Positions 20,601 to 52,150 of a stretch of 64,000 nt of DNA are shown one piece after another. Both the position numbers and the translations under genes were made by a program. Positions within the stretch are counted from its first letter, which is position 1. Every line of letters starts with the position of its first letter. The notes under the pieces are model-generated. The model ran no database searches and was not told the origin of the DNA. It saw only the letters and a program-made list of their open reading frames with translations. Where the stretch lies: IMG/VR virus record IMGVR_UViG_3300047560_000921, positions 62,001 to 126,000 of that record. The stretch is one strand, 5' to 3'.

Positions 20601-23600
20601 GCATACAGTGACATGTTGTACTATGGTCCAGTAAAGAGTTCAGTTAGCTATGTTATCAATGATTTGGCACCAGCCACTGTGACCTACGCATTACCAATCG
20701 CCGTTGACACTACAGATCCGTACCGTAATCATGTTTACGTTTACGTTGACAATGTAATTAAAACACAAGGTGTGGATTATATCTTAAATGCAACAACAGT
20801 AGAATTCACACAACTAACAGGCCCATGCACAATTAAGATTGTTGTATACGAAACAAAAGATAATTGCTTCGTACCAACATCATTGAGCAAGCTAGGTATG
20901 GCACCTGTATATTGCCCACAAGTTATCGTAGACAGTACTTACCCTACACCAACTAGCTTTATACAATGCCACGATGGTAGCATGATTGTAGCGTACAACG
21001 ATTACCGTGATGCAATCATTTACGAATTTGAAACAAGAATTTACAACAATATTTGCGACAAGTTTAAGGAAAAGCGTTTCCCATGGGCAAACGCTGAGCC
21101 AGGCGTGTTTAGAGCTACCCGTGTTACTAGAGAAGACAAAGCCAATTATCTAGGTGATTTGTTTAGACTATGGAAAACAACTAACGGTGTTAACGATTTA
21201 GATAACAGCCAGTTCTACCAACAACCTAATAAGTTTACATGGAACTACTCTACTGTTAGTAGCGGCCTGGGCGGCAGTTGGAGAAGCATTTATAAAGCGT
21301 TATACGACACTGACCGTCCGCATAGCCATCCATGGGAAATGGTGGGCTACAGTATTAAACCAACTTGGTGGGACACATACTACAGCTGGACCGATCCATA
21401 CAAGCGTCAGCCATTGATTGATGCATTACAAGCAGGTAATGTGGCTTGCCCACCTAGCATGGTAATCGACCATAAATTTGCTCGCCCTACAATGACTTTC
21501 CCTGTGGATTATGCAGGACAGTTGCAAGATCCAGTTACAGCGGGATTGTTGTCCGCACCTACACAAGAAAACGCACAGTTGAATTGGGTTGCAGGTGATA
21601 TTGGTAACCAAGAACTTGCATGGGTTCGCAGTGAAGAATATCCATGGGCAATGGCCCAATGGTACTATACTGTAGCACCTAACAAGTACATCGAAAAGTC
21701 ATGGCAACCAGAATATGCAGGTACTGACTTTTACAATACGCAATACTCTGTTAGCCAATTGCAAAATGCTAGACCAATGGTAGGCGACTACTTGTTCCAT
21801 AGAGAACTATTTGACGGCAACGTTACAGTTCGCTATGGTTTAGAAAACGTTATTGCCGAAAGTTTAATCAGCGATAGCAAAACATTGGCTGATTACTTCT
21901 ACGACCTGATTCGTTATGCAACAGTGCAGAACATCTTTAAGGTTGGCGGTTTTGCTGACAAGCGTAACTTAACGTTCCTTGCAGATAGCTTGAAGACACA
22001 AAGCGGTGGCAACTTCATCCCTGAAGAAAATTACAACTTAACCTTCTACAAAGGTACTCCATACAAAGAGTTCTTCTACAGTGGTGTTAAGGTAGTTTAC
22101 AACGGCACTGGATATGAAGTACAAGGTTATGACTTTGTAAATCCATACTTTACAGTATACAAGCCAAAGAACTCTAGCCGTGTAACAGAATTTACATACG
22201 GTAACATTACAGTTAAAGAAGCACTAGACTGGGAAACAACTGCTAGTACAGTTGACTACGGCACTACATTTAACAGCAGAGAAGGCGTTGTTAACTTCCT
22301 ATTAGGATTACAACGTTGGATCTTGGAACAAGGCGTTGTGTTCACCGATTATGACAGCAACATGAACAGCATTAAAGACTTCCGTCAAAGTGCTCAACAG
22401 TTCTTGTTCTGGAGCGAAACAAAGTGGACAGATGGATACTATATTGCCCTAAGCCCATGTGCCAACAAGTTAGTAATTCAAAACCCACAAGGTTTCGTAG
22501 AAGACTTTAATCAATTAAGCAGAGGCTTTGCTCCTCTAATTGATAAGGACAAAGTGCCATTGGATGTTAGCAACGTTCGTGTAACTCGTGCAGACGACGG
22601 CGTAACAACAGTTACAACAAAGAGCGACCAAACTGGTTTGTTTGGTGTTCGTATCCGTATTATCGACATTGAACATGCTGTAGTATTCGATAACATTACT
22701 GCGTTTAACGACATTGTATACGATCCTATCCTACGACTAAAACAGTACCGCTTGAAGTTTATCGGACAGCGTACTGCTGATTGGATGGGTCGTCCAAGTG
22801 CTCCTGGTTACTTGATTAACGGTAGCACAGTGATTGCTAACTACGATAGAACAATTAGCGATATGGAAACCAGATACTTCAACGTTGAAGGTAGTACATT
22901 GAACACACGTTTAGTTGAAACTGCACGTCACAACTTGGGTATCAACACTACGAGCTACTTAGATAACTTGTTACTGAACCCAAGCGTGGCGTTTGAATTC
23001 CAACGCGGCATGATTCGTCAGCAAGGTACTCCTGCGGTATACAACAAGCTATTGCGTAACACAAACGTTGAAGGCACAATTAGCACATTACAAGAACTTC
23101 AAGTAGATGAAGAATGGATGTTTAAGCTAGGTGAGTTTGGTGCAAACGAAACACAAACGTCGTGGGAATTGCAATTAAGACAACGTGAATTTAAAGACAA
23201 TAAACAGTTGTTTAGATTCCTACCTGACTATGACCCTAATACTGAACGTAGTAATGTTGACAGAAGCACTGATAGAGTTATTGATGTTATGTCGTCCGAC
23301 AATCGTTGGATTGATAGACCTGGTACAAGTAATTTAGAATTCCCTGTTCGTAAGAAAACAGAGATGACCGACGACCAAAACGAAATCGTATTTGATACAG
23401 ACTTGCCTAACGCTGGCTTTATTAACTTTGATGATGTAGACTTTGTAACCAGTGACGCTACTACTGTTGTAGATTTATACGACAGTATAGATGTTTCTAC
23501 TAAGCCTACTATTTGGTTAGGTAACTATAAAGAAGGTAACTGGAGTGTAATTGCACAACAGAATTCATACACTATTGTTGAAATCGTAAAAGCAGATGCT

Positions 23601-26600
23601 AGCCCAACCGGTGCAACAAACGTAGTGTTCGATACAGCTCATAGCTTTGTTGTTGGTGATGTGTTATACATTACTGGTAGCGACAGTAGTGCAATCATTG
23701 ATGGCATAGTAACAGTGGCTAAAGTAGTAGACACCTTAACCGTTCAAATTTCTACTATTATCACTGACGCAGGTACAACGGGTACTGCATACTTGTATGC
23801 TCCGGTGGTATTTGAAACTAAAGCAGAACTTGAAGCTACCCTAGACAATACTCGTTACAATTGGATTGACAACGAACTAGCCTATGTAAAAGAAGACGCA
23901 GGTTACACAGTATATCAGTGGCAAAGCGAATATCGTACTGGCGACGATATCACTATGATTCCTGTACTATATCAAGCGTTTGATCAGTACAGCAAAGAAA
24001 CTCCTTTAGTGGATACTTACAAGATTCACGAAGCTAACATATATGACCACAAGTTAGACAGAATTTTAGTTGACTTAGAACTGTTTGATCCATACAAGGG
24101 CGTTATCCCAAGCGTAGCAGATATTGAAATTGACCACAAAGGCAGTGTAGATCCTGCACAATACGAATTCAGTACTGATGACAATGTTACAGTTAACAGC
24201 GATAGTCCATGGGGCGAACGCCAAGTTGGTACAGTATGGTGGGATACCGGCAACGTCAAGTATGTTGAGTACGAACAAGGTACACTAGACTACAGAAGTA
24301 AAAATTGGGGCAAGTTGTTTACTGGAAGTACTATTGATATATACGAATGGATCGAAACCTCAGTTGATCCAGTGGCATACAATGATGCAGTAAGTAAAGG
24401 TACTCCGGTCGACGGACAAGTTCCTAGCGGAACAGCAAAAGTAACACCAACGGCAGATATTAGCAACACTAGCTATTCTACTAAAGTGTATACTACTGAA
24501 ACGGGTGCAGATGCAACCAAGTATTATTTCTGGGTGAAGAACAAAACTACATTGCCTGGCAATCGTAGAGAACGTCGTATACCTGTAGCTAGCTTGGCTA
24601 GCATAATTACTGACCCAACTAACAACGGTATCAGTTGGTTTGCTCCTATTAGCAAAGACTCGTTCATTGTTGCTAACGTATCACAGTTCTTAAACGACAC
24701 TACGACTAGTTTGCAAATCAAGTTCAAGTCAGATGAAACAAACGTACACAGCCAATGGATGATCCTGCGCGAAAACGATGGCACTGTTGGTATTCCTGAA
24801 TGGCTACACATCAGACTGCGTGACAGTTTAGTTGGTTACGACAGTACGACTTATGTGGCAGACTACACTACATACCAAGCTAATACAGCGTATGTGTTTG
24901 GTTCGATTGTTAAACAAAACAACAGCTTCTATAGAGCTTATAGAACATTCACAGACGATGATGTTACAAAAGCGTTTGGACAACAGCCGTTCTATAAGTT
25001 GTATGAGTACACATTGCTGGCTAACAATACAATTAGAATGCCATTGCCAAATGACGTACCTGATCCAAGATTGAATCAGTTTAATCGTTACGGTAACCGT
25101 ATTCGTCCTACACAACAAAGCTGGATTAGAAACCGTAGTGAAGCTCGCAGAAACTTTGTAGAAGTTGCTAACCAGTTGTTGGCAAAGATTGACCTAGTAA
25201 ACACAGTAGCTAATTGGGATGACCATTTGCATGATTTTACTAAAGGCGAGTACGACTATCAATTGACTAAGTTCTGGGATTACATTGATTATGTAGATCC
25301 TGCTTACGACGATACAATTCCATATAGCTATGAAGTTGAAACTGAACAACAAATTTATCAGTTAACTGCAACGCTAAACAATGGCGACTATGTTTTAGTT
25401 AAGAACGATGCCATTGGTAAGTTTGCAGTATATGAATATGTCGATGAGCAACAAGTTCTTCGTTACAGAAAGAACGGAACCATTGCTTTCAAAGAGATTT
25501 TATTCAATAGTCAAAAGCAACAAGATACATGGGATGCAGGTCCATGGGACTTTAAACAATGGGACCCAGAGCCAAGCCAAGAGTTTTATGAAATCTTAAC
25601 TGCATTGCGCGAAGATATCTTCATCAATCAGTATGCAACATACTATAACAAACTATTCTTTGCTATGGTACGTTATGTATACAGTGAACACAACCGTGTT
25701 GAATGGATTGCAAAGAGTACTTACTTACACGTTGATAACTTGGCGGTAAAAGGCTTGGAGCAAAAGCCATTCTACGAAAAAGATACAGTAGAACAGTTTG
25801 TTGACTATATTGACCAAACTAAGCCGTATCGTAGCAAGTTGCGCGAAGTACTAGATACACGTAACGTAGACGACAGCGGTGACGTAACTGCTGAAGATTA
25901 TGTATACCCGCACGTTACATTGAGATTTAACAGAACAGGACAAGGTCCAAGTTTAGTTAACACAATTAACGCTAACGTAGATGTTGAAGCGGGTATATTA
26001 ACTACCATGGACTTCAACACATACGAGCCAGGACAAAACCGTCGTCCATGGGACTTCCCAGGTGTTGGTTTAGATCCAACCCGCGAACAGTTAGAAGCAT
26101 TATTAGATGCAGTATACAATGGCGGTGATTTTGGTATTTTACCAGAACAGCTACAAATTGCCATCGACGGTGCACCATTCAATATCCAACGTTTGGAACA
26201 AAACCCAGACGAAGAATTGGCTATTTTACGTGCCGGCGACGCATTAGAAATTCTAGTAGAAACACGCTACTTAAAAGATACGCCTCCTGCCCCAGGAGAA
26301 AGCGAATACGAAACTTACAGTTTCCGTATGCTTAAAGCGTTAAATAATGAGTGGTCCTACAGTAGAATTGCTAACGATGCTAAGACAACATTAGTAACAG
26401 CAATAACTCCAGAAAGCGAGTACATTGAAGTTGCAGATGCTACCCGACTAAGCGGCGTTGATATTACGTTTAGACGCCCAGGTATTATATTCATTGGCGG
26501 CGAGCGTATTGAATACTATGAAGCTAACGGAAATGTGCTAGGTAAACTAGTACGTGGAACACTAGGTACAGGTGCTGCCAACCACAGCGCAGGTGCTATT

Positions 26601-26771
26601 GTAATGGATGCAGATCCATTACAAACAATTCCTGTAGAAAGAGAACGTACAGGGGCTATTATTTTCAACAAGCCTACTGTGATTTTCAACGAACTAGGAA
26701 AAACTATGAAAGAAAGCCGCACGTTGGCTACTATTTTCATCACTGAAAAACAGGGTGATTTAAATAGGTAA
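17643..26771 (+). CDS. Giant virion structural protein (baseplate wedge/gp7-like), 3042 aa
   Basis: Follows gp6; N-terminal FLPGYF.T..N.KFL; contains a GTGY beta repeat, a CBM-like YQANTAY..GSIV....FYRA segment and a C-terminal RGTLGT...H..G motif. Confidence 0.7.
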   Translation: MAEKKNFSAQPVVASKNTVPGEASGNEILQTSNFLPGYFRTDTNVKFLSTTLDKLVSKGTPEDINLYVGKKSGTVYRPTKDFYLEENRSIRADYQLEPGVVFKDIDGTITNALAYDDFMDQLKLNWSKTKPDYLDSEYYIWNPPIDTDMFTNFTSYYWLKFDPLPIQLEGTINVTTDIIGKLQYTTPVQPNGKTLTFHNGMKVYFINKNAITSFSGQNPGTGYTNGYYAGVTLVGQTEDVTGAGVKVNLTVAGGAVTEVELVEGGQGYKVGDMLRCGPNIIGAGTNFSVTVTAITAPTVTPSEYVSDPDPLADPTYFIVSGVGDSIKLVPSAHLDARTPYTMLAYVPWDGVNWDRKKWDTSEPAPIQKEYIVMERGAKDQNPWSRTNKWYHVDAVKAVCEFLDVNSADYLKIDQRAARPIVQFNCNIELFNYGKNPITPVDLVIDGIAPSTITSETAYTVDGITLKNDYRVVFINGNNTYNNKIFRVTGVGTGISFIAEPDNIPSADDKVFVLRGSTYIYREMWFDGFNWLLGQNKTKRDQFPLFTLYDKNAVGIGNTAEYPDSDFAGNTLFQYQIGTVYDNELGFNIAYESTNFDIIDNASPFAKTFTNIVFDVTQHNPIYYKDTLGLRSQIAGNYYYQYWDEKLGRYNQSNGWVKNSEPPKTYQRISKTVNNKLTDNVVTIPLDSTPSYSFMLTQEYGQAVFWCLSKNGEWERFDPVTNTLVVPHMDTATVLNMSGLPLTFVDDDNNPDLTIVTNNGASSGVIEITCLDKVNLRYTFNGQVGQVIVTDTYNDPRSFLVRINGYDKTVGFTYDVNNGAIDVTVDSTVLKTGDIIEILFESSLEWGTYAVHNTIEANANNETFMSVGYNQVFNHFKSKLLSTYGLEGEGYGKNNYYNIHKNAGAGWVIQQQENSSLKLAALLRLNETNPINVLRFGAEQSKIFRQKFLQKISVLVTEVDVVELTTAELLDKALTDINVGKSHDFTHAYSDMLYYGPVKSSVSYVINDLAPATVTYALPIAVDTTDPYRNHVYVYVDNVIKTQGVDYILNATTVEFTQLTGPCTIKIVVYETKDNCFVPTSLSKLGMAPVYCPQVIVDSTYPTPTSFIQCHDGSMIVAYNDYRDAIIYEFETRIYNNICDKFKEKRFPWANAEPGVFRATRVTREDKANYLGDLFRLWKTTNGVNDLDNSQFYQQPNKFTWNYSTVSSGLGGSWRSIYKALYDTDRPHSHPWEMVGYSIKPTWWDTYYSWTDPYKRQPLIDALQAGNVACPPSMVIDHKFARPTMTFPVDYAGQLQDPVTAGLLSAPTQENAQLNWVAGDIGNQELAWVRSEEYPWAMAQWYYTVAPNKYIEKSWQPEYAGTDFYNTQYSVSQLQNARPMVGDYLFHRELFDGNVTVRYGLENVIAESLISDSKTLADYFYDLIRYATVQNIFKVGGFADKRNLTFLADSLKTQSGGNFIPEENYNLTFYKGTPYKEFFYSGVKVVYNGTGYEVQGYDFVNPYFTVYKPKNSSRVTEFTYGNITVKEALDWETTASTVDYGTTFNSREGVVNFLLGLQRWILEQGVVFTDYDSNMNSIKDFRQSAQQFLFWSETKWTDGYYIALSPCANKLVIQNPQGFVEDFNQLSRGFAPLIDKDKVPLDVSNVRVTRADDGVTTVTTKSDQTGLFGVRIRIIDIEHAVVFDNITAFNDIVYDPILRLKQYRLKFIGQRTADWMGRPSAPGYLINGSTVIANYDRTISDMETRYFNVEGSTLNTRLVETARHNLGINTTSYLDNLLLNPSVAFEFQRGMIRQQGTPAVYNKLLRNTNVEGTISTLQELQVDEEWMFKLGEFGANETQTSWELQLRQREFKDNKQLFRFLPDYDPNTERSNVDRSTDRVIDVMSSDNRWIDRPGTSNLEFPVRKKTEMTDDQNEIVFDTDLPNAGFINFDDVDFVTSDATTVVDLYDSIDVSTKPTIWLGNYKEGNWSVIAQQNSYTIVEIVKADASPTGATNVVFDTAHSFVVGDVLYITGSDSSAIIDGIVTVAKVVDTLTVQISTIITDAGTTGTAYLYAPVVFETKAELEATLDNTRYNWIDNELAYVKEDAGYTVYQWQSEYRTGDDITMIPVLYQAFDQYSKETPLVDTYKIHEANIYDHKLDRILVDLELFDPYKGVIPSVADIEIDHKGSVDPAQYEFSTDDNVTVNSDSPWGERQVGTVWWDTGNVKYVEYEQGTLDYRSKNWGKLFTGSTIDIYEWIETSVDPVAYNDAVSKGTPVDGQVPSGTAKVTPTADISNTSYSTKVYTTETGADATKYYFWVKNKTTLPGNRRERRIPVASLASIITDPTNNGISWFAPISKDSFIVANVSQFLNDTTTSLQIKFKSDETNVHSQWMILRENDGTVGIPEWLHIRLRDSLVGYDSTTYVADYTTYQANTAYVFGSIVKQNNSFYRAYRTFTDDDVTKAFGQQPFYKLYEYTLLANNTIRMPLPNDVPDPRLNQFNRYGNRIRPTQQSWIRNRSEARRNFVEVANQLLAKIDLVNTVANWDDHLHDFTKGEYDYQLTKFWDYIDYVDPAYDDTIPYSYEVETEQQIYQLTATLNNGDYVLVKNDAIGKFAVYEYVDEQQVLRYRKNGTIAFKEILFNSQKQQDTWDAGPWDFKQWDPEPSQEFYEILTALREDIFINQYATYYNKLFFAMVRYVYSEHNRVEWIAKSTYLHVDNLAVKGLEQKPFYEKDTVEQFVDYIDQTKPYRSKLREVLDTRNVDDSGDVTAEDYVYPHVTLRFNRTGQGPSLVNTINANVDVEAGILTTMDFNTYEPGQNRRPWDFPGVGLDPTREQLEALLDAVYNGGDFGILPEQLQIAIDGAPFNIQRLEQNPDEELAILRAGDALEILVETRYLKDTPPAPGESEYETYSFRMLKALNNEWSYSRIANDAKTTLVTAITPESEYIEVADATRLSGVDITFRRPGIIFIGGERIEYYEANGNVLGKLVRGTLGTGAANHSAGAIVMDADPLQTIPVERERTGAIIFNKPTVIFNELGKTMKESRTLATIFITEKQGDLNR

Positions 26772-26795: not shown

Positions 26796-27443
26796 ATGTT
26801 ACCAAATGAAAATGCAAATCTAAAAATAGAAGGACATTTGAAAGTATTTGACCCAGCAACGGGTCAAGTATTTGTGAATCAGCGCAATGCAATTAACCCA
26901 GAAAACCTGAGTATTGCACTGGCACAGAGCCTAGCTTATGCTCACACAAGTCCAACAACACGAATCGGTCCTATCTTTGAAATGCACTTCGGCAACGGCG
27001 GAACTGTTATTGACTCTATGGGCGTTATTACGTACAAGGGCTCTAATGTTAGCGGCCAAAACGAAGATTTATACAGTCCTACATTTTTTAAAGTAGTTGA
27101 CGGCAACGATACTGTTAATAACACAGATACTACTAGCAATTTTATTACGTTTGAGCACATTAATGGCTTAACTTACAGTGATATTGTTGTTAACTGTGTT
27201 ATTGACTATAACGAACCTGCTGTGGGAGACACTACTTTTAACTTGGCAGGACAGTCGCAAGATGCTTTAGATAATGCTAGTACATTTGATGGCTCATTTG
27301 TATTTGACGAGATTGGCTTAAAAAGCAAAGGAACAACACTGAACGGTGGCTTATTGTTAACTCACGTTACATTCCACCCAGTACAAAAGTCCGCAAATAG
27401 ACTCTTGCAAGTACGTTACACTATACGAATTAGAGTGGCCTAA
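26796..27443 (+). CDS. Virion structural protein (baseplate/fibre-attachment type)
   Basis: FGNGG, FDEIGL and HPVQKSANR motifs; position in the tail module. Confidence 0.6.
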   Translation: MLPNENANLKIEGHLKVFDPATGQVFVNQRNAINPENLSIALAQSLAYAHTSPTTRIGPIFEMHFGNGGTVIDSMGVITYKGSNVSGQNEDLYSPTFFKVVDGNDTVNNTDTTSNFITFEHINGLTYSDIVVNCVIDYNEPAVGDTTFNLAGQSQDALDNASTFDGSFVFDEIGLKSKGTTLNGGLLLTHVTFHPVQKSANRLLQVRYTIRIRVA

Positions 27444-27476: not shown

Positions 27477-28529
27477 ATGGCATATGATGTCAATAAAACA
27501 GATGGTACGCTACTGACAAGTATTGCTGATGGCACCTTGGATGTTAGCACCAGCATTAGGCTAGTAGGTAAAAACTACGCAGGCTATGGCGAAGTAATGG
27601 CTGAAAACCTAGTAGCAATGCTAGAAAACTTTTCATACCCTACGGCTCCTGCTAATCCTGTTGTCGGACAACTTTGGTTCAACAAAGGCAACAAGGCATT
27701 AAGCGTATTTGATACTAGTGGTGCATGGAAAGAAATTGCCAACAGATATATCAGAGATTCTGAGCCAATCGTCGACGGTAACAGAACTGGTGACTTTTGG
27801 TTTAATCCTACTACAAAGACATTGTACGTTTGGGACGGATCTAAGTGGGTAATGTTAGGATTCCCTGACAGTAACACTATTGTATATTCTAGTATTCGTG
27901 ACGTTAACGGTTTATACCATGATGTTATTATTCACTATAATACTGAAAAAGTTCCAGCTGATCCGTTATACCCAACAGTAAACATTACAGCTACTAAGTT
28001 GATTATGGCAATTATGAGTGCAGACGAGTTTACTCCTGCTACTACAGAAACAGCCATTATCGGCGAGTTCCCAACGATCGGCAAAGGTATGAACTTACCA
28101 ATCCGCACAGGAGTTAAGTTCCGCGGTGTTGCTGTACAAGCAGAATTTGCTGACGTTGCAGAATATTATGAATCAGATGTTCCTTATAGTCCAGGAACAG
28201 TGGTTAAATTGGGCGGAGAAAAAGAAGTCACACAAACACAAAGCGAAGCAGACGACCAAGTGTTTGGTGTTGTTTCTACTGACCCAGCGTTTATACTTAA
28301 CGGTGCTGGCTTGCGTAAAGGTGCGGCACTTCCAGTAGCATTAACAGGTCGTGTACCAGTGCAAGTAATTGGCCCAGTATGGAAAGGCGCTAGATTAGTT
28401 TCTAGCCATATCCCAGGCGTTGCAAAAGCAGTTGAGCGACCAGACCCCTACACAGTAATTGGTCGATCACTTGCAAATTCAGATGATCAAGGAATACGAT
28501 CAATCGAGGCTGTTGTAGGAGTACGTTAA
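27477..28529 (+). CDS. Tail fibre-like protein with conserved C-terminal domain
   Basis: LVGKNYAGYGE..AEN...LENF, two GQLW/GDFW fibre repeats, ADVAEYY...GVVSTDP..VALTGRVPV C-terminus. Confidence 0.7.
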   Translation: MAYDVNKTDGTLLTSIADGTLDVSTSIRLVGKNYAGYGEVMAENLVAMLENFSYPTAPANPVVGQLWFNKGNKALSVFDTSGAWKEIANRYIRDSEPIVDGNRTGDFWFNPTTKTLYVWDGSKWVMLGFPDSNTIVYSSIRDVNGLYHDVIIHYNTEKVPADPLYPTVNITATKLIMAIMSADEFTPATTETAIIGEFPTIGKGMNLPIRTGVKFRGVAVQAEFADVAEYYESDVPYSPGTVVKLGGEKEVTQTQSEADDQVFGVVSTDPAFILNGAGLRKGAALPVALTGRVPVQVIGPVWKGARLVSSHIPGVAKAVERPDPYTVIGRSLANSDDQGIRSIEAVVGVR

Positions 28530-28530
28530 A

Positions 28531-29577
28531 GTGTCAGATTTTATCCAAGGTCAAATAATAACAGCGGCTCAGTGGAATGAGCTAGCTCAGGCCGTGAATA
28601 AAATCTGGGGTGACGATATGGCCGGCGGCGGCCCAACCGCTGATCCGGTACTTAAAGAAGCATTAAAGTATGGCTGGGGACAAAGTCCGTTGGCCCAACA
28701 AGCAGTAGCAGGTAATACTATTGATCATACATTATGGAATAGTACAATTGATATTGTTAACATTTCTGCACATAATACAGGCGCCCTGGCATTAGGAACG
28801 AACTTAGCTAGAACAGCAACAGGACAAAAGATTACAGCAGCACAAGCTCAAGTGCTTAACGTCCTTAACTCACTAGTCGATGCAAATCGCAATAATTTAG
28901 TAGCGGCAAGAAAACAATTTGCCACACTAGGAACTAACTCTAGAACTGCTCCATGGAAAAATAAAATTTCCGCTGAAGTACATTATCAATTTGGTAGCTT
29001 TGACAACGCACGTTATTTCTTTAATAGTGGCGGACAGTTACGACTACATATGACGGCTAGCGGCGGATCAACCCGCGGATACCAGTCATGGCAACAAGTA
29101 TACGGAAAGCTAGGTACATTTGTTTTAGATATCAACTCTTGCACTAACACCGGCACTTATGCTGTAAGTGAAAGCAAAGGCTTCTACGAATTGTCGGCCA
29201 CAGAAACATTACTAATGACAGCTACCAGTTCGGGTAGCGGCAGTGGGTATGGCGGCTACGGCGGCTACGGCGGCTATGGGGGATACGGCTGTTATGGCGG
29301 CTACGGTGGCTACGGCGGCTATGGCGGCTACGGCGGATACGGAAGCTACTGTACATTCAGATTGAAAGTATACGGAAGATTGGTTGACAACGGCACAGTT
29401 GCTATTAGATTTGAAATGGATAGTACTGCATTTAGGATCAATGTTGACGGCACACATGTATTAACCGCCAACGTATTATATGCGGCCCCAGATACATACG
29501 GTGATGCACAATTCAATATTCCAGCTCCAAATTATTATTTGGCAGATGGATTTGACACAGCCGGCTTAGACAACTAA
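28531..29577 (+). CDS. Virion/tail-associated protein with a Gly-Tyr-Gly tract
   Basis: G..ITAAQWN collar-like repeats and ARYFFNSGG motif; GYG tract near the C-terminus. Confidence 0.65.
   Translation: MSDFIQGQIITAAQWNELAQAVNKIWGDDMAGGGPTADPVLKEALKYGWGQSPLAQQAVAGNTIDHTLWNSTIDIVNISAHNTGALALGTNLARTATGQKITAAQAQVLNVLNSLVDANRNNLVAARKQFATLGTNSRTAPWKNKISAEVHYQFGSFDNARYFFNSGGQLRLHMTASGGSTRGYQSWQQVYGKLGTFVLDINSCTNTGTYAVSESKGFYELSATETLLMTATSSGSGSGYGGYGGYGGYGGYGCYGGYGGYGGYGGYGGYGSYCTFRLKVYGRLVDNGTVAIRFEMDSTAFRINVDGTHVLTANVLYAAPDTYGDAQFNIPAPNYYLADGFDTAGLDN
29245..29352 (+). repeat. 9-bp tandem coding repeat: (GYG)5-CYG-(GYG)5-SYC
   Basis: ggc-tay-ggn units with synonymous variation; 12 Tyr in 36 codons. 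Confidence 0.95.
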
Positions 29578-29625
29578 AATAATTGCGATAAATAACTGCG
29601 TACTTAATACACAGAGAGAATCGCA

Positions 29626-29979
29626 ATGGATAAACGTCTTCAGGAAGCGTTAGACTTTAGTAACTATAGACTAACGCTATCTAATCAAAAAAACAATCTT
29701 AAACAACGAGCAGAAGTTCAAAAGCTCGTAAACCACAATAATGGAATCTTCACAGCTCGTGTAGAACAAATGGGCTACATAAGCTATTTGATTTCCAGCG
29801 GCGCAGAGCAACAGGTGTTCATGGACAACAACGATATACCTGTGCTAGTTAAAGACTTGCCTGTATTTTTAGAAAAACTTAACAGTGCATACACTATGGC
29901 TATGAATGAGTTCTTTGTGGAAAACGAAAAGCTCAAGCGCCTGCGTAATGTAAAAAGTTTGGTTAACTTAAATGAGTAA
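29626..29979 (+). CDS. Hypothetical protein, possibly a tail-fibre chaperone-like helical protein
   Basis: First gene after TAAATA at 29589; coupled to the glycosyltransferase block. Confidence 0.5.
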   Translation: MDKRLQEALDFSNYRLTLSNQKNNLKQRAEVQKLVNHNNGIFTARVEQMGYISYLISSGAEQQVFMDNNDIPVLVKDLPVFLEKLNSAYTMAMNEFFVENEKLKRLRNVKSLVNLNE

Positions 29980-30856
29980 CGGTGTAGTTCTTTTTGCCTA
30001 CACTAACGATACTATCGATTACACTAAACTAGCTGTAATGACAGCGTTGTCTGTAAAGGCAAATTTAAAAAACAATAATGTAGCATTGCTAACAGATGTA
30101 AAAACACAGGATCATTTGTTGGCAACACATCCTGCTGATTTGATTAGATATTGCTTCGACAAAATTATAGTCGAAGATTTAACACACGATGAGAATACTC
30201 GTGTACACAACGACAGTCCGTGGCATTCTTTTAGAACACAGTTTAGCAACGGTAACAAACATAACGTTTACAATTTGAGTCCATGGGATAAGAGTTTACT
30301 AATAGACGTTGATTACATTGTAAACAGTAACGCACTAGACAGTCTGTTTGATTCTGATTATGAACTTGCACTGTTCAGAAATGCAAGAGGCTTACGATGG
30401 GAATTACCACACCACGAAGAACAACGTTTACATCCTGACGGAATCGACATGTGGTGGAGCACAGTTGTATATTGGCAACGTAGTGAACCTAGTACACAGT
30501 TCTTTAATATGTGGCACCATGTTAAAGAGAACTACGACTATTACAAGTTCCTTTATAAGTTCCCTGGTAAGATGTTTAGAACAGATTATGCGTCCAGCAT
30601 AGCCATACATTTGTTAAACGGACAGCGAGAAGGTAACTGGGTTAAAGAAATTCCGCCTGGCACCATGCGTTACATGGATCAAAAAGATGAAATGGTAAGC
30701 ATCAACGGCAAGAATGATTTTACTTTCCTCAGTAACTTCCATCATGAACCATGGCGAAATTTGCCAGTGAGGCTAGTCAATGAAGATATCCATATGATGA
30801 ACAAGCTGGCGTTACTAAGGCACTATGATAAGTTTGTAAAGGAATACTATGTCTAA
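29972..30856 (+). CDS. Glycosyltransferase-like (GT-A fold)
   Basis: GVVLFA..Y.KLA...ALS, SPWDKSLLIDVDY (DxD), C-terminal HMMNK. Confidence 0.65.
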   Translation: MSNGVVLFAYTNDTIDYTKLAVMTALSVKANLKNNNVALLTDVKTQDHLLATHPADLIRYCFDKIIVEDLTHDENTRVHNDSPWHSFRTQFSNGNKHNVYNLSPWDKSLLIDVDYIVNSNALDSLFDSDYELALFRNARGLRWELPHHEEQRLHPDGIDMWWSTVVYWQRSEPSTQFFNMWHHVKENYDYYKFLYKFPGKMFRTDYASSIAIHLLNGQREGNWVKEIPPGTMRYMDQKDEMVSINGKNDFTFLSNFHHEPWRNLPVRLVNEDIHMMNKLALLRHYDKFVKEYYV

Positions 30857-31664
30857 GGGAATTATAACTTATGCAAACAATGAGCAGTACATCAAGCAAG
30901 CGGTAATACTAGCAGTAACAGCACGTAAAAATAGTAACTTGCCGGTATCGCTAGTCGTTCCTGAATCCGTAGTAGTTGACGATTCATTTAGAAACTACTT
31001 TGATACAGTAATTTCGCTAGAGCTTAGTGTTGGGCCTGACAGGGGCTTATTAGATACTTTGACTAATAGTCCTTACGAAAATACACTGTTCTTGTATAGT
31101 GACTCTTTAGTATTGTCTGATATTAATGATATCTATGCACAGCTAGACTTTTATGACATTGTCATGAATGATCAGTTGCTCGACTTTAAAGGCAGCAACA
31201 TTACTAGACAGTTATATGAGCAACGTAAAATTATAGTCAAGAACAATTTAACTGATGTATGGAGCAATGCTATCTTGTATAAGAAAACGGATAACTTGTT
31301 GGAATGGACCAAGTTGGCACACCGCATTATTACATTTTGGCAATTTTTCAGGGATCAACACTTAACTGAGTACGGTATAGACGATAAGCTACGTTTAAAG
31401 TTTAACACTGCATTATGTCTAGCTATGAAATTAGCAGACACTACTGTGGCCCGAGGATTTCCGCTTACAACATTATCCATGCAAGAAGAAAACACTGCAA
31501 GTTTAGCATGGGCCAACTTGGACTGGTTTGTATTTTTAAATGCATGGATATTAGACAACGGGCAAGTTAAAGTTGAAAACTATGTTCAGTCAGGAATACT
31601 TCATTACGGCAAGAGTTGGATGAACGATGATATTTACAATAGACTACTAAAAGTATATGCATGA
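30849..31664 (+). CDS. Glycosyltransferase-like paralog with degenerate DxD
   Basis: KGIITYA..YIKQA..LA, SPYENTLFLYSDS, LHY.K; collinear with 29972..30856. Confidence 0.55.
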   Translation: MSKGIITYANNEQYIKQAVILAVTARKNSNLPVSLVVPESVVVDDSFRNYFDTVISLELSVGPDRGLLDTLTNSPYENTLFLYSDSLVLSDINDIYAQLDFYDIVMNDQLLDFKGSNITRQLYEQRKIIVKNNLTDVWSNAILYKKTDNLLEWTKLAHRIITFWQFFRDQHLTEYGIDDKLRLKFNTALCLAMKLADTTVARGFPLTTLSMQEENTASLAWANLDWFVFLNAWILDNGQVKVENYVQSGILHYGKSWMNDDIYNRLLKVYA

Positions 31665-32640: not shown

Positions 32641-33620
32641 TAGTACCTATTACAGAATTTGATGTAGTTTTTATGAGCTACGATGAACCCAATGCAGATG
32701 AAAACTATGCAGACTTGCTAACTAAAATTCCATGGGCACTACGAAGCCACGGTGTTAAAGGTAGCGATGCTTGCCATAAGGCCGCGGCCGCGCTATGCTC
32801 TACAGACAGATTCATTACTATTGACGCTGATAACATTGTTAGAGAAGATTTCATGAACATTCAGATTGACATTAACAAAATTGACCGCAGTGATGTTATT
32901 AGCTGGGCTGGTAAGAATGTAGTTAACGGTTTAGTCTACGGCAACGGTGGGATTAAGTGCTGGCCAAGACATGTGGTAGAGCAAATGAAAAGCCATGAAG
33001 CATCGGATACACCCGAAAGCCAAGTTGATTTTTGCTGGAACATTAATTACATTCAAATGAATAATGTGTATAGCGATGTGCTTAATAACGCAACTCCCTA
33101 TCAGGCATATCGTGCAGGATTCCGTGAAGGTGTAAAGCTAGGATTGGAGCGTGGCGTAACAGTTGATCCTAGAAAATTTAAACAAGCAGTTCACTATAAA
33201 AATTATCAACGTTTGCTAGTATGGGCTAGTGTTGGAGCAGATGTACCCAATGGCGAATGGGCAGTATATGGTACTCGTCTTGGATGTTACTTGACTAACA
33301 TGAAACGAGATGAGTTTGATTTTGTCAATGTCAGAGACTTTGAGTGGCATGACGAATTTTGGGCCAAAGAAGTTGCACCTAAATTCTCTGGCAATGGCAA
33401 AACTTGTCCTCGTAGCGGATACAGCTGGGACCCGCAAGCATTACAACAGGAAACATTAAGACTGGGTGTAATATTAAAACAAGAATTAGGACTAGAGTTA
33501 GCAGACTTAGACGCCGAAGCAAGCAAATTCTTTAAAGCAACCTATGTAAACCCTAATAGGCTCGGACCAATGATTCGAGAGGACTCAGTACTCAAGGGAG
33601 TGGGATCAGACAATGAGTGA
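32637..33620 (+). CDS. Glycosyltransferase-like (GT-A), family B copy 1
   Basis: FDVVFMSYDEPNA, HGVKG..HKAAA, IDAD, NGLVYGNGG.K, GFREGVKL. Confidence 0.7.
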   Translation: MIVPITEFDVVFMSYDEPNADENYADLLTKIPWALRSHGVKGSDACHKAAAALCSTDRFITIDADNIVREDFMNIQIDINKIDRSDVISWAGKNVVNGLVYGNGGIKCWPRHVVEQMKSHEASDTPESQVDFCWNINYIQMNNVYSDVLNNATPYQAYRAGFREGVKLGLERGVTVDPRKFKQAVHYKNYQRLLVWASVGADVPNGEWAVYGTRLGCYLTNMKRDEFDFVNVRDFEWHDEFWAKEVAPKFSGNGKTCPRSGYSWDPQALQQETLRLGVILKQELGLELADLDAEASKFFKATYVNPNRLGPMIREDSVLKGVGSDNE

Positions 33621-35025
33621 TTATAGTTACTTTAATCAAAGATTAGGACACATTAAACAGGTTATCGATAATGTAAGTCCTAGCTTCTGTGCGGCTAAAT
33701 GGACGCAAGTAACTATTCATTTACAAACAGGAATGACGCATAGTTGCCACCATCCTATGCAACATAAGATTCCGTTAGAAGAAATTAAATCTAATCCTAG
33801 CGCCCTGCACAATACTGCGTACAAAAAGAACCAACGTGCTCAAATGTTAAACGGCGAGCGGCCACGTGAGTGTGACTATTGCTGGAGAGTGGAAGATACA
33901 GAAGGTACTCACTTTAGCGACAGGATATTAAAGACTGCCGAAGAGTGGAGCTACCCATACATGCATAAGATTGTCAATGCACCGTGGGACGATAACACTA
34001 TACCAAGCTATGTTGAAGTTAGTTTTGGTAACGGTTGTAATTTTAAATGTGCATATTGCAGTCCTGATATTAGTAGCAAGTGGATGGAGGAGTCCACTAA
34101 GTATGGCCCGTACAATTTGGAACATACTGTATTCAATAACGTTGAGCGTCTTAAAGAGCTGGATAGAATGCCTATACCTGACAGAGAAGACAATCCTTAT
34201 GTAGATGCCTGGTGGGCTTGGTGGCCAGAGTTGTATCCTAACTTACACACATTCCGTATTACGGGCGGTGAGCCACTGATGAATAAAAATACATTTAGGA
34301 CATTGGATTACATAGAAGCTAATCCTAACCCTAATTTGAATTTTGCAATTAACACTAACTTGTGTTTGCCTGACAGCATCATCGATAAGACTATTGCTCA
34401 ATTGAATAGGATTACTTCTAATAAGGCTGTAAAGAAACTACACATCTATACTAGTGCTGACACTTATGGTCCACATGCAGAGTACATTCGCAATGGCATG
34501 GATTATAGACAGTGGTACAAGAACATGCAACGCATTATCAAAGAATGTCCGGATGTAAGCGTTACAATTATGGTTACGTTTAACGTAATGAGCTTGCCTA
34601 TGTTTAAGTATTTCTTAGAAGATGTGGCAGCAATTAAGAACGATACAACAATTTTACGCACAGAAGAACGTAAGCATCCGTTGTACGTAGACTTTCCATA
34701 TTTAAGACATCCTGAGTTTTTAAGTAGTTTGATTGCTAGTGATAGTATGAAGGCCAGCTTTAACGAATGTGTGGATTACATTAAAGAAAACTTAGGGCAC
34801 GGTCACAAGCACCCGGATCACTTTGGGTTCTATCAGCATGAGCTACATGCCGCAGAGCGTATACAGCATTTGTTAGCCAATCATAAACTAAGTGAAGAAC
34901 AATTAAAAAAGAATCGTAGAAGTTTTGCATTGTTTATTGAAGAGCATGACAAGCGCCGCGGCACAAACTTTAAGGTAACGTTCCCAGAGCTTATCCCATT
35001 CCTTAAGGAGTGTAGAAATGCTTGA
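33613..35025 (+). CDS. Radical SAM protein with N-terminal twitch/SPASM-like domain
   Basis: CNFKCAYC, TGGEP, N-terminal C..KW...SC...CDYCW. Confidence 0.9.
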   Translation: MSDYSYFNQRLGHIKQVIDNVSPSFCAAKWTQVTIHLQTGMTHSCHHPMQHKIPLEEIKSNPSALHNTAYKKNQRAQMLNGERPRECDYCWRVEDTEGTHFSDRILKTAEEWSYPYMHKIVNAPWDDNTIPSYVEVSFGNGCNFKCAYCSPDISSKWMEESTKYGPYNLEHTVFNNVERLKELDRMPIPDREDNPYVDAWWAWWPELYPNLHTFRITGGEPLMNKNTFRTLDYIEANPNPNLNFAINTNLCLPDSIIDKTIAQLNRITSNKAVKKLHIYTSADTYGPHAEYIRNGMDYRQWYKNMQRIIKECPDVSVTIMVTFNVMSLPMFKYFLEDVAAIKNDTTILRTEERKHPLYVDFPYLRHPEFLSSLIASDSMKASFNECVDYIKENLGHGHKHPDHFGFYQHELHAAERIQHLLANHKLSEEQLKKNRRSFALFIEEHDKRRGTNFKVTFPELIPFLKECRNA

Positions 35026-41220: not shown

Positions 41221-41231
41221 GTCTGTCTCTC

Positions 41232-43546: not shown

Positions 43547-43551
43547 ATGCG

Positions 43552-43557
43552 TATTTA
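43552..43557 (-). promoter_or_regulatory. Late promoter TAAATA 5 nt before the desaturase ATG
   Basis: TAAATA-CGCAT-ATG; same spacing as at 10084 and 14028. Confidence 0.55.
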
Positions 43558-45970: not shown

Positions 45971-45971
45971 A

Positions 45972-52044: not shown

Positions 52045-52072
52045 TGTATAGTGCTCCTAACTATTTAATATG

Positions 52073-52102
52073 TATTATACACTAATTCTGAATTAATGTC
52101 AA
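52073..52102 (-). promoter_or_regulatory. sigma70-type early promoter
   Basis: TTGACA-N17-TATAAT. Confidence 0.85.
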
Positions 52103-52107
52103 TATCG

Positions 52108-52139
52108 AAAAAAAGGACGGGCACCGAAGTGCCACGTCC
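52108..52139 (-). terminator. Intrinsic terminator with cUUCGg tetraloop
   Basis: GGACG(T)GGCAC-TTCG-GTGCCCGTCC-TTTTTTT just after the MoxR stop. Confidence 0.85.
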
Positions 52140-52150
52140 AGGAGCAACCA

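What the first reader, a model, noticed from the sequence alone, without database searches (positions are those of the whole stretch)
29245..29352. Symmetric (GYG)5-CYG-(GYG)5-SYC insert in a structural protein
Seen: the third codon positions vary (tat/tac, ggc/ggt/gga/ggg), so the peptide repeat is probably selected rather than a recent slippage product. Two equal blocks are punctuated by Cys and preceded by an SGSGS linker. Inference: an exposed flexible loop serving as a multivalent acceptor (glycosylation, hydroxylation to DOPA, radical-SAM or dityrosine cross-links), or a low-complexity adhesive segment, possibly closed by a disulfide.
Basis: partly seen in the sequence, partly recalled or inferred. 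Interest (0 to 1): 0.7.

Follow-up and report, generated by a model that had tools for sequence, protein, structure and literature searches.

The report
Variable glycine-tyrosine loop, phage tail protein
The Gly-Tyr repeat is real: it is an unusually long version of a fast-changing, selection-maintained, probably floppy surface loop found at one fixed spot in a large uncharacterised family of tail/baseplate-module proteins of uncultured aquatic giant phages, most likely a sticky host-contact loop, though no experiment has tested this.

Summary
Residues 239-274 of a 348-aa ORF (28531..29577, +) read (GYG)5-CYG-(GYG)5-SYC, after an SSGSGS leader.

- **Where it sits.** It is the only low-confidence part of a confident AF2 model. 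It is inserted at a hairpin between two strands of a C-terminal beta-sandwich.
- **Family.** The protein belongs to a large unnamed phage family (2,140 representatives at E<=1e-10) in a conserved tail-gene block. A tract-less homologue, PA5oct gp360, is flagged as detected in virions by mass spectrometry.
- **Variation.** The same turn carries ([G/S/A]1-2 Y)n with 0-22 Tyr. The period differs by clade: GGY, GY, GGYS.
- **Dynamics.** Proteins identical or 99% identical outside the tract differ by 1-5 repeats.
- **Selection.** The window's tract has 12 synonymous and 3 nonsynonymous changes (P~2e-5). Only S, C and A interrupt the tracts.

My best reading is an exposed, flexible, Tyr-studded adhesive or recognition loop of tunable length. 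This function is inferred.

The radical-SAM idea is disfavoured: the enzyme is commoner where tracts are short. Two GT8 (glycogenin-fold) glycosyltransferases lie just downstream, but at least one is present whatever the tract length, so Tyr-glycosylation stays open. DNA shows no two-block duplication behind the 5+5 "symmetry".

The parts
28531..29577 (+). Gene for the 348-aa Gly-Tyr-loop protein (GTG start, directly after the stop of the upstream fibre gene). It has an N-terminal helical part (residues 1-123) and a C-terminal beta-sandwich (about 128-348).
   Evidence: ORF and translation. AF2 model: pLDDT 87.8, pTM 0.87. The sandwich is galectin/Csp-jellyroll-like only at Z 5-7.6. No Pfam, PHROG or NCBIfam family. 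Family of 2,140 representatives at E<=1e-10.
29011..29034 (+). Family signature motif RYFFNSGG (residues 161-168). The Gly-Tyr tract begins about 72-80 residues after it in most tract-bearing relatives.
   Evidence: Invariant R161, F163, F164, N165 in alignment A1. The pattern retrieved at least 514 relatives in IMG/VR. Tract offsets.
29227..29244 (+). SSGSGS leader (residues 233-238), the small-residue lead-in to the tract. Relatives have SGSGGGG, SGGGG or AGGGG here.
29245..29352 (+). The Gly-Tyr tract, residues 239-274: 12 Tyr at period 3, with C254 in a Gly position, S272 in a Gly position and C274 in the post-tract A/S position. Predicted disordered insertion at a beta-hairpin turn.
   Evidence: Sequence. 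TRF. pLDDT below 50 for residues 237-272. Synonymous excess. Homologous tracts.
27477..28529 (+). Upstream neighbour: a 350-aa fibre-like protein whose C-terminal part resembles the auto-cleaving intramolecular chaperone domain of tail fibres and spikes. Part of the conserved gene block.
   Evidence: Pfam Peptidase_G2 E 1.9e-5 (24.6 bits, just under the cut-off of 25). PHROG 19602 'tail fiber protein' and phrog_6427. Found directly upstream in nearly all loci whose upstream flank is held.
26796..27443 (+). 215-aa protein of the conserved block (phrog_11259, function unknown).
   Evidence: E 1.6e-63. Synteny. The gene at the equivalent position in PA5oct (gp357) carries the ESI-MS/MS virion note.
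17643..26771 (+). Giant 3042-aa protein that heads the conserved block. The PA5oct counterpart gp355 is annotated as a virion structural protein.
14414..17641 (+). Baseplate wedge subunit. It places the block in the baseplate/tail region of a jumbo myovirus.
   Evidence: phrog_10646 E 0, 1090 bits. Distant DNA matches to baseplate wedge genes of PA5oct-like and RaK2-like jumbo phages.
29626..29979 (+). Conserved 117-aa protein immediately downstream (function unknown). Preceded by a sigma-70-like promoter match at 29552-29580.
   Evidence: Synteny in nearly all loci with a held downstream flank. Promoter match 11 of 12. No family hit.
29972..30856 (+). GT8-fold (glycogenin-like) retaining glycosyltransferase, a candidate modifier. 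A link to the tract is unproven.
   Evidence: AF2 pLDDT 93.3. Foldseek PDB top hits are glycogenin, UGGT, GlyE and LgtC at E~1e-6. VIA Z 15.5 to human glycogenin-1 over 220 residues. Invariant D112-x-D114 and H213. Present in 46/46 loci.
30849..31664 (+). Second GT8 / nucleotide-diphospho-sugar-transferase-like protein.
   Evidence: Atlas features 0.97 and structure TM 0.61-0.67 to GT8/Nucleotid_trans clusters. Pfam Mannosyl_trans3 only E 0.33.
33613..35025 (+). Twitch-domain radical SAM protein. Considered as a modifier of the tract and disfavoured.
   Evidence: NCBIfam NF033640 E 1.7e-95. Pfam Radical_SAM. Inverse association with tract length.

Best explanation
The tract is an expansion of a conserved tyrosine-bearing beta-hairpin turn in the C-terminal beta-sandwich of a baseplate/tail-fibre-module virion protein. 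The phage is an uncultured freshwater jumbo myovirus.

**Shown here**
- The loop is a family-wide feature of the form ([Gly/Ser/Ala]1-2-Tyr)n at one fixed position.
- It is predicted to be unstructured, and it sits at a hairpin turn, so it is presumably solvent-exposed.
- Its length changes faster than the rest of the protein.
- Its composition (Tyr plus small uncharged residues) is held by purifying selection.

**Inferred**
- The loop works as a flexible, multivalent, tyrosine-studded contact element for the host surface, most plausibly glycans. Tyr side chains would make many weak contacts, and Gly would give reach and freedom.
- Gain and loss of repeats would tune reach and avidity, or track changes in the host.
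- The mid-tract Cys and the 5+5 layout would be mutational accidents tolerated because Cys is small.
For: **Position and disorder**
- Only residues 237-272 fall below pLDDT 50 in a model with mean pLDDT 87.8. They lie between strands 226-232 and 277-285.

**Family-wide, fixed site**
- The tract starts about 72-80 residues after RYFFNSGG in most tract-bearing relatives.
- Short-loop members carry small-small-Y-[A/S]-[E/N]-N at this turn.
- Among 152 representatives the Tyr counts are: 0 in 40, 1-2 in 55, 3-4 in 33, 5-8 in 21, 9-14 in 3. IMG/VR relatives reach 22 Tyr.

**Deep retention**
- All 28 rows of the window's clade keep a (GGY)n-type tract, although the window's closest relative shares only 41% identity.
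- Another clade has (GY)n, and one isolated expansion occurs in the short-loop clade.

**Fast length change**
- Flanks 100% identical carry 17 vs 18 Tyr. Flanks 99.3% identical carry 17/18 vs 22 Tyr.

**Selection on the peptide**
- The window's tract has 12 synonymous and 3 nonsynonymous changes, P 2e-5 to 8e-5.
- All long tracts use mixed synonymous codons.
- In 975 tract residues from 31 tracts, the only residues other than G and Y are S 28, C 11, A 8, E 1, Q 1. R, D, V, H, N and F never occur, although they are equally one mutation away.

**Virion and host-contact context**
- The gene sits in a conserved block: giant protein, p215, fibre with chaperone-like C-terminus, then this gene, next to the baseplate wedge.
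- Homologue PA5oct gp360 (hhalign 99.8%) is flagged as virion-detected.
- In other phages the module is fused to a subtilase, to five Ig-like domains, or to BP74_N or Calx-beta-like parts.

**From established knowledge, not tested here**
- Tyr/Ser/Gly-only loops suffice for tight, specific binding in minimalist synthetic antibodies.
- Aromatic residues stack on sugars in lectins and carbohydrate-binding modules.
Against: - No binding data exist, and no cultured phage carries a tract.
- Many family members, including PA5oct gp360, do without it, so it is not essential to the fold or to the core role of the protein.
- AF2 disorder may hide an ordered state that forms only in an oligomer or in the virion.
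- The sandwich's likeness to galectins is weak (Z 5-7.6) and shows no sugar-binding site.
- Length variation and compositional purity could also arise if the loop only has to stay soluble and harmless.
Confidence: 0.45

Rival explanations
1. Glycan acceptor. The Tyr (or leader Ser) residues of the loop are O-glycosylated by the phage's own GT8-fold glycosyltransferases encoded just downstream. This would put a sugar brush on the baseplate protein, with glycogenin-style Tyr priming.
For: - p294 has a GT8 fold with glycogenin as top match: VIA Z 15.5 over 220 residues, Foldseek E~1e-6. It has an invariant DxD plus His.
- p271 is also GT8-like.
- p294 lies in conserved synteny, starting about 0.4 kb after the gene, in 46/46 loci.
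- PA5oct lacks both the tract and the downstream cluster.
- From established knowledge: glycogenin glucosylates its own Tyr, and some mycobacteriophages glycosylate virion proteins with phage-encoded glycosyltransferases.
Against: - p294 is present whatever the tract length, and loci with no tract still keep downstream transferase genes.
- p271 is actually commoner where tracts are short: median 2 Tyr where present vs 8 where absent.
- A strong promoter-like site separates the cluster from the structural gene.
- GT8 enzymes have many acceptor types (LPS, glycans, Ser).
- Glycogenin leads the other GT8-clan matches only marginally (Z 15.5 vs 14-15).
- The cluster could equally serve DNA or host-envelope modification.
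Confidence: 0.2
2. Tolerated low-complexity expansion. Replication slippage keeps inflating and deflating a surface turn. Selection only removes variants that are charged, bulky or aggregation-prone, and the loop has no positive function.
For: - Repeat number differs between near-identical proteins.
- Many members have no tract.
- Period and motif differ between clades.
- Interruptions are the mutationally nearest small residues.
Against: - The whole GGY clade (28 rows) keeps a tract, even though the window's closest relative shares only 41% identity.
- The synonymous excess and codon scrambling show long persistence under peptide-level constraint.
- Tyr itself is almost never replaced.
- At least two or three separate lineages converge on the Tyr-plus-small-residue composition.
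Confidence: 0.2
3. Ordered structural element. Eleven G-x-Y triplets form a collagen-like or polyglycine-II helix (a Tyr ladder) within an oligomer. The Tyr might be cross-linked (dityrosine) or the loop pinned by a C254-C274 disulfide, to stiffen or lock baseplate parts.
For: - The residue after each of the first 11 Tyr is Gly.
- Cys recurs within tracts of several lineages.
- From established knowledge: phage fibres are usually trimers, and Gly-rich PGII sandwiches exist in T-even gp38 adhesins (literature found).
Against: - Homologous tracts have period 2, 4 or 7 as well as 3. No single helical geometry is conserved.
- Length varies by single repeats between near-identical proteins.
- There is no Pro or charged residue of the kind collagen-like phage repeats carry.
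- AF2 gives no ordered state.
- Cys positions are not conserved.
Confidence: 0.12
4. Radical-SAM substrate. The neighbouring twitch-domain radical SAM enzyme cross-links or otherwise modifies the repeated Tyr/Cys motif, as in RiPP-type repeat maturation.
For: - An N_Twi_rSAM family enzyme lies 4 kb downstream on the same strand.
- A second, B12-binding radical SAM lies at 41235-42779.
Against: - The twitch rSAM is found in 4/15 loci with >=9 Tyr and in 11/16 loci with <=2 Tyr. Most of the longest tracts (L024, L025, L042, L043, L045) have none within the roughly 10 kb held downstream.
- There is no leader-peptide architecture. The tract sits inside a folded 348-aa protein.
Confidence: 0.03

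Closest known systems
Pseudomonas phage PA5oct gp360 (YP_010678854.1) and its copies in Callisto and other Wroclawvirus phages
   Same: A true homologue (hhalign probability 99.8%, E 3.5e-28 over 260 columns). It occupies the same place at the end of the block giant protein, ~200-aa protein, fibre/gp10-like genes. Its record carries the ESI-MS/MS note used for virion-linked proteins.
   Different: It has no Gly-Tyr tract; the two strands are joined directly. It has an extra ~130-aa C-terminal part and no downstream glycosyltransferase cluster. Identity is only about 23-27%.
Glycine-rich motifs and hypervariable segments of T-even/S16 gp38 tail-fibre adhesins (polyglycine-II sandwich)
   Same: A Gly-rich, aromatic-bearing, rapidly evolving element on a receptor-recognition protein of a myovirus tail (literature located; structural details from established knowledge).
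   Different: No sequence or fold relation was found. In gp38 the Gly motifs are conserved and ordered and the loops between them vary. Here the repeat itself varies in number and is predicted disordered.
Collagen-like Gly-X-Y repeats of phage tail fibres
   Same: Gly at every third residue over 11 triplets, and a copy number that varies between relatives.
   Different: The X/Y positions are Gly/Tyr rather than Pro/Thr/charged residues. Relatives use periods 2, 4 and 7. The tract is a loop inside a globular domain, not a shaft segment.
Tyr/Ser/Gly-rich antigen-binding loops (natural CDR-H3; minimalist Tyr/Ser synthetic antibodies)
   Same: Works like: a loop on a beta-sandwich built almost only of Tyr plus small residues, where Tyr supplies the contacts and Gly/Ser the flexibility (established knowledge). 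The composition here is G 573, Y 353, S 28, C 11, A 8 of 975 residues.
   Different: No homology. Binding is not shown here. The phage loop is a regular repeat and is up to 74 residues long.
Eukaryotic Gly/Tyr-rich low-complexity proteins (insect cuticle GGY-repeat proteins, high-Gly-Tyr keratin-associated proteins, plant glycine-rich proteins, FUS-type [G/S]Y[G/S] regions)
   Same: The same repeat chemistry; the literature uses the name 'GGY repeats'. These proteins are known for self-association and material properties.
   Different: Unrelated proteins and biology. No phage example turned up in the literature searches.
Glycogenin (GT8) and its self-glucosylated tyrosine
   Same: The neighbouring p294 has the GT8 fold, glycogenin is its best structural match, and it keeps DxD plus His. 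The tract offers many Tyr hydroxyls.
   Different: The acceptor would be a separate protein. There is no evidence of modification. Other GT8-clan enzymes score almost as well, and p294 is present whether or not a tract exists.

Membership tests
Unnamed phage family typified by PA5oct gp360 (RYFFNSGG-motif tail-module protein) | Significant full-length sequence similarity, including the RYFFNSGG motif | tested here: met
   48 hits, the best 38 or so being full-length relatives (the last few are low-complexity DnaJ-type hits). R161, F163, F164 and N165 are invariant. 2,140 representatives at E<=1e-10. hhalign 99.8% to the PA5oct-type protein.
Unnamed phage family typified by PA5oct gp360 (RYFFNSGG-motif tail-module protein) | Same fold: N-terminal helical part plus C-terminal beta-sandwich | tested here: met
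   Predicted models of viral relatives superpose at TM 0.64-0.83. AFDB clusters match at TM 0.71.
Unnamed phage family typified by PA5oct gp360 (RYFFNSGG-motif tail-module protein) | Conserved position in the baseplate/tail-fibre gene block | tested here: met
   The same gene order is seen in the 80 IMG/VR loci and 6 assembly loci as far as their flanks reach, and in PA5oct-type phages.
Unnamed phage family typified by PA5oct gp360 (RYFFNSGG-motif tail-module protein) | Presence in the virion | not testable with these tools
   Known only for the distant homologue PA5oct gp360, from the ESI-MS/MS note in its record and the paper PMC7318152. No proteome exists for this uncultured phage.
Collagen-like triple helix | Gly at every third residue over a long run | tested here: met
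   Eleven consecutive G-x-Y triplets.
Collagen-like triple helix | Period 3 conserved in homologues; imino- or polar-rich X/Y positions | tested here: not met
   Relatives carry (GY)n, (GGYS)n, (GYGYGSG)n, (YS)n and (AY)n at the same site. X/Y here are only G, C, S and Y.
Polyglycine-II sandwich (gp38-type adhesin) | Sequence or fold similarity to gp38 / an ordered PGII array | tested here: not met
   No family hit. No such PDB match. The tract is modelled with pLDDT below 50. A monomer model cannot exclude order in an assembly.
Radical-SAM-matured repeat peptides (RiPP-like) | Co-occurrence of the substrate repeat with its radical SAM maturase | tested here: not met
   The rSAM is present in 4/15 long-tract loci and 11/16 short-tract loci.
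Substrate of a GT8 (glycogenin-like) protein glycosyltransferase | A GT8-fold enzyme with intact metal/nucleotide-sugar motif encoded nearby | tested here: met
   p294: Z 15.5 to glycogenin-1, invariant DxD and His. p271 is GT8-like.
Substrate of a GT8 (glycogenin-like) protein glycosyltransferase | Enzyme presence tracks the acceptor tract, or the enzyme and the tract protein are predicted to bind | tested here: inconclusive
   p294 is present in 46/46 loci regardless of tract length. The complex prediction gave no answer.
Substrate of a GT8 (glycogenin-like) protein glycosyltransferase | Sugar attached to Tyr or Ser of the tract | not testable with these tools
   This needs mass spectrometry of the protein.

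The most novel reading that the evidence does not exclude
The loop is a poly-tyrosine glycosylation scaffold. The phage's own glycogenin-fold GT8 enzymes, with the further transferase-like genes downstream, would build glycan chains on up to 12-22 tyrosines of a baseplate protein. Repeat number would set the size of a virion-borne sugar brush used for adhesion or camouflage. This would be the first phage tyrosine-O-glycosylation system, and a viral counterpart of glycogenin priming.
Probability: 0.1. Interest if true: 0.85.

Novelty: new variant of a known kind. Interest (0 to 1): 0.5.

Why it matters
Host-contact proteins of uncultured aquatic jumbo phages are almost entirely unannotated. This work defines a large family (over 2,000 representatives at 50% identity) with a signature motif, a confident fold and a fixed place in the tail gene block.

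It also pinpoints the one loop that evolves by rapid repeat gain and loss while its Tyr-plus-small-residue chemistry is conserved. Such a loop is a natural candidate for a host-range or adsorption determinant, and a handle for tracking strains in metagenomes.

If the loop binds through tyrosines alone, it would be a natural counterpart of the minimalist Tyr/Ser/Gly binding loops made in antibody engineering. If instead it is glycosylated on tyrosine by the adjacent glycogenin-fold enzymes, that would be a new kind of virion modification.

In either case the finding yields concrete experiments that need only recombinant protein.

Tried and rejected
- **Family libraries.** Pfam, PHROGs and NCBIfam gave no family for the protein.
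- **Fold searches.** Foldseek against PDB gave nothing below E 0.02. VIA-align wide gave only generic beta-sandwich matches: Csp jellyroll Z 7.6, galectins Z 5-6. AFDB clusters, BFVD and the ESM Atlas returned only unnamed or mis-named viral relatives.
- **Atlas lead.** One Atlas row carries a 'twitch rSAM target Cxxx repeat' family, but at TM 0.32 only. A scan of the 231-kb record found no convincing Cxxx-repeat gene. I dropped this lead.
- **Complex prediction.** p294 (GT8-like) with the Gly-Tyr protein gave no answer (score 0.00). This is evidence neither for nor against binding.
- **Sequence profiles against PDB.** The p294 profile reached glycogenin only at E 0.7. The p327b profile gave only a spurious transporter hit. 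The fold route was needed for p294.
- **Read-level length variation.** Only assembled contigs were available for the runs that hold this phage. They show one form, identical to the window. Rare length variants cannot be excluded. The low-depth partial matches are other organisms' Gly-Tyr-coding DNA at 85-90% likeness.
- **Cultured phages with a tract.** tblastn with three different family members found only the tract-less PA5oct-type phages and one Ralstonia jumbo phage.
- **Literature.** No paper on Gly-Tyr repeats in phage proteins was found.
- **Two-block duplication behind the 5+5 symmetry.** Rejected, because self-identity at offset 54 does not stand out.
- **Radical-SAM linkage.** Disfavoured on co-occurrence.
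Full report
**1. The observation**

Window 29245-29352 lies in frame in an ORF at 28531..29577 on the + strand (348 aa, GTG start one base after the stop of the upstream gene). Residues 233-238 are SSGSGS.

Tandem Repeats Finder gives period 9, 10.2 copies and 80% matches. Tyr occurs 12 times at period 3, and the residue after each of the first 11 Tyr is Gly. The array is therefore eleven G-x-Y triplets, with Cys and Ser in x positions.

The tract is not an assembly artefact. Contigs from the two runs of the source freshwater sample cross it unchanged at depths 129 and 247, and a contig from another sample matches its second half exactly. It is the only such tract in the 231-kb viral record, which has 41.4% G+C. 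CheckV rates that record 65% complete, so this is a jumbo phage.

**2. The protein**

No Pfam, PHROG or NCBIfam family matches. With 33 homologues as alignment, AF2 gives a confident model (pLDDT 87.8, pTM 0.87). It has a helical N-terminal part (residues 1-123) and a C-terminal beta-sandwich.

The only segment below pLDDT 50 is residues 237-272, which is the tract. It links strand 226-232 to strand 277-285. The sandwich resembles galectins and the jellyroll of Csp subtilases only at Z 5-7.6, which is a common arrangement and not a diagnosis. Predicted-structure libraries return only unnamed viral relatives.

**3. A large family with a variable loop at one fixed site**

- The word-index search gave 48 hits, the best 38 or so of them full-length relatives.
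- An exhaustive profile search found 2,623 cluster representatives at E<=1e-3, 2,140 at E<=1e-10 and 909 at E<=1e-30.

The invariant signature is RYFFNSGG (residues 161-168). In most tract-bearing relatives a Tyr-plus-small-residue tract starts 72-80 residues after it. Its length runs from nothing to 74 residues and 22 Tyr.

Short-loop members have a turn of the type small-small-Y-[A/S]-[E/N]-N. Long tracts end in the same Y-A-S-S-type motif. The tract is thus an expansion of a conserved Tyr-bearing hairpin turn, and the window's last Cys (C274) sits in the post-tract A/S position rather than in the repeat.

Among 152 representatives the loop holds 0 Tyr in 40, 1-2 in 55, 3-4 in 33, 5-8 in 21 and 9-14 in 3. 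The window's 12 Tyr are near the top of that range.

The repeat unit differs between lineages: GGY, GY, GGYS, GYGYGSG, YS, AY, SAY. On a tree of the flanking sequence:
- all 28 rows of the window's clade carry (GGY)n-type tracts, although the window's closest relative shares only 41% identity;
- a second clade carries (GY)n;
- the third clade is short-looped, with one isolated 41-residue expansion (the tool flags long branches).

**4. Dynamics and selection**

Proteins whose flanks are 100% identical differ by one repeat (17 vs 18 Tyr). Flanks 99.3% identical carry 17/18 vs 22 Tyr. Pairs 91-95% identical differ by 1-2 repeats. Repeat number therefore changes faster than the rest of the protein.

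The peptide is nevertheless constrained:
- Against a perfect GGC-TAC-GGC array, the window's tract has 12 synonymous and 3 nonsynonymous changes, where 26-30% synonymous is expected (P 2e-5 to 8e-5).
- Every long tract in relatives uses mixed synonymous codons. Exact period-9 self-matches reach only 14-44 nt.
- Over 975 tract residues from 31 distinct tracts, the only residues besides G (573) and Y (353) are S 28, C 11, A 8, E 1 and Q 1. R, D, V, H, N and F never appear, although all are one mutation away from GGY or TAY codons.

Cys (TGY) is the single-step neighbour of both Gly (GGY) and Tyr (TAY) codons, and it turns up at varied positions in several lineages. DNA self-identity at offset 54 (0.78) is no higher than at other multiples of nine (0.75-0.83). 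I therefore read the 5+5 layout as one Gly-to-Cys change near the middle of an array, not as a designed two-block unit.

**5. Context**

The gene ends a conserved late-gene block:
- baseplate wedge (phrog_10646, E 0);
- a giant 3042-aa protein;
- a 215-aa protein (phrog_11259);
- a 350-aa fibre-like protein with a chaperone-type C-terminus;
- then this gene.

The order is the same in the six assembly loci and the 80 IMG/VR loci, as far as their flanks reach. It recurs in Pseudomonas jumbo phage PA5oct and its kin.

PA5oct gp360 is a genuine but distant homologue (hhalign 99.8%) and lacks the tract. Its record carries the ESI-MS/MS note, and the PA5oct paper uses ESI-MS/MS to identify 93 gene products linked to virion particles (PMC7318152). 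That is the basis for calling this a structural protein. It is an inference from homology.

In other phages the module is fused to a subtilase (Peptidase_S8, E 4e-29), to five Ig-like domains (Big_3_5), to BP74_N or to a weak Calx-beta match. This is company typical of exposed virion proteins. No cultured phage with a tract was found.

**6.

*Radical SAM.* A twitch-domain radical SAM gene (NF033640, E 1.7e-95) lies 4 kb downstream. Across 46 distinct loci with enough flank, it occurs in 4/15 loci with >=9 Tyr and in 11/16 with <=2 Tyr. Most of the longest tracts have none within the roughly 10 kb held downstream. The enzyme is not tied to the tract.

*Glycosylation.* The second gene downstream (p294) folds with pLDDT 93 into a GT8-type GT-A enzyme. 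Glycogenin is its best match (Foldseek E~1e-6; VIA Z 15.5 over 220 residues), followed closely by UGGT, GlyE, LARGE1 and LgtC. It has an invariant D112-x-D114 and H213. The next gene (p271) is also GT8-like, and further downstream genes give only weak transferase hints.

A glycogenin-fold enzyme beside a poly-Tyr loop is suggestive. But p294 is present in all 46 loci whatever the tract length, p271 is commoner where tracts are short, and a strong promoter-like site (11 of 12) sits between the two units. The complex prediction gave no answer. The idea stays open at low probability.

*Hydroxylation or cross-links.* The window also holds two Asp/Asn-hydroxylase-family genes, a TauD dioxygenase, a B12 radical SAM and a desaturase at 39-47 kb on the other strand. 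Nothing links them to the tract.

**7. Mechanism**

*Shown:* a selection-maintained, Tyr-plus-small-residue loop of rapidly changing length, predicted disordered, at a hairpin turn of a beta-sandwich in a tail-module protein.

*Inferred, and my best reading (about 0.45):* a flexible, multivalent contact loop for the host surface. Tyr side chains would provide many weak contacts, plausibly to glycans. Gly would provide reach. Repeat gain and loss would tune avidity or follow host change. This parallels what Tyr/Ser/Gly loops achieve in antibody paratopes, and it fits the conservation of composition but not of period.

*Rivals:*
- glycan acceptor for the GT8 enzymes (0.2);
- merely tolerated slippage with compositional filtering (0.2);
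- an ordered collagen/PGII-like or cross-linked element (0.12), weakened by the varying period and single-repeat polymorphism;
- radical-SAM substrate (0.03).

**8. Comparison and novelty**

By membership, this is a new, long-loop member of the unnamed PA5oct-gp360-like family. By mode of action, it is nearest to variable Gly-rich or repeat elements of phage receptor-binding proteins (gp38 Gly-rich motifs, collagen-like fibre repeats). It fails their defining tests: no homology, no conserved period and no ordered model.

The repeat chemistry matches eukaryotic GGY-type low-complexity proteins, but there is no relation. No paper describing such a tract in a phage protein was found.

I rate it a new variant of a known kind, namely hypervariable low-complexity loops on phage host-contact proteins. 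Interest is moderate, and it would rise sharply if tyrosine glycosylation were shown.

Noticed in passing
window 29972-31664 (+): Two consecutive GT8-fold glycosyltransferase genes directly after the tail-module genes. The first (p294) has glycogenin as its best structural match (Z 15.5) and was found in all 46 related loci tested. Their acceptor is unknown.
   Followed up: partly
window 32637-38583 (+): The operon-like run continues with p327b (invariant D63-x-D65; weak GT2/GT92 leads), a twitch-domain radical SAM (33613-35025, NF033640 E 1.7e-95), and p235 and p698. tblastn hits suggest that p235 and p698 share a domain with p327b; p698 also has Glycos_transf_2 at E 0.055. A 274-aa protein follows. 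The role of the twitch rSAM family in phages is unclear.
   Followed up: partly
window 38913-47709 (-): A modification or metabolic island: a B12-binding radical SAM (41235-42779), a fatty-acid-desaturase-like protein, a TauD-family dioxygenase, two Asp/Asn beta-hydroxylase-family proteins and an SDR/epimerase-like protein. Related loci also show FA_desaturase and Asp_Arg_Hydrox genes downstream.
   Followed up: no
window 29552-29580 (+): A near-consensus sigma-70-like promoter (TTGACA, 17-nt spacer, TAAAAT; 11 of 12) overlaps the stop codon of the Gly-Tyr gene, just upstream of the conserved 117-aa gene. The transferase cluster may therefore be a separate transcription unit.
   Followed up: no
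L024:7643-11059, L025, L042, L043, L032 (IMG/VR loci): In one subclade the Gly-Tyr module is the C-terminal part of a protein of about 1,100-1,240 aa whose N-terminus is a subtilase (Peptidase_S8, E 3.8e-29) with a propeptide-like start. This would be a virion-borne protease fused to the module. Other fusions are 5x Big_3_5 (L068), BP74_N (L030), and a 2,568-aa protein with a weak Calx-beta match (L074).
   Followed up: partly
window 27477-28529 (+): The upstream 350-aa fibre-like protein has a C-terminal match to the auto-cleaving intramolecular chaperone domain (Peptidase_G2, 24.6 bits against a cut-off of 25). Its stop is one base before the GTG start of the Gly-Tyr gene, which suggests translational coupling.
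   Followed up: no
window 17643-26771 (+): A 3042-aa ORF conserved as the head of the block (2,975-3,407 aa in relatives; 3,857 aa in PA5oct, where it is a virion protein; one relative and a PA5oct-like record hint at a chitin-binding-type domain). No family was assigned here.
   Followed up: no
window 11335-11970 (+) and 48301-49206 (-): A QueC-like PP-loop protein (E 1.3e-8), which hints at 7-deazaguanine DNA modification, and a ThyX thymidylate synthase (E 4.6e-59).
   Followed up: no
window 50803-53230 (-): A DUF2201 metallopeptidase/VWA-like protein next to an AAA (MoxR-like) ATPase, a pair of unknown role in this phage.
   Followed up: no
window 29245-29352, runs X1, X2, X4: The freshwater and sediment metagenomes contain many short low-depth contigs from other organisms that encode similar Gly-Tyr repeats (85-90% alike). 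Such tracts are therefore common in these communities.
   Followed up: no
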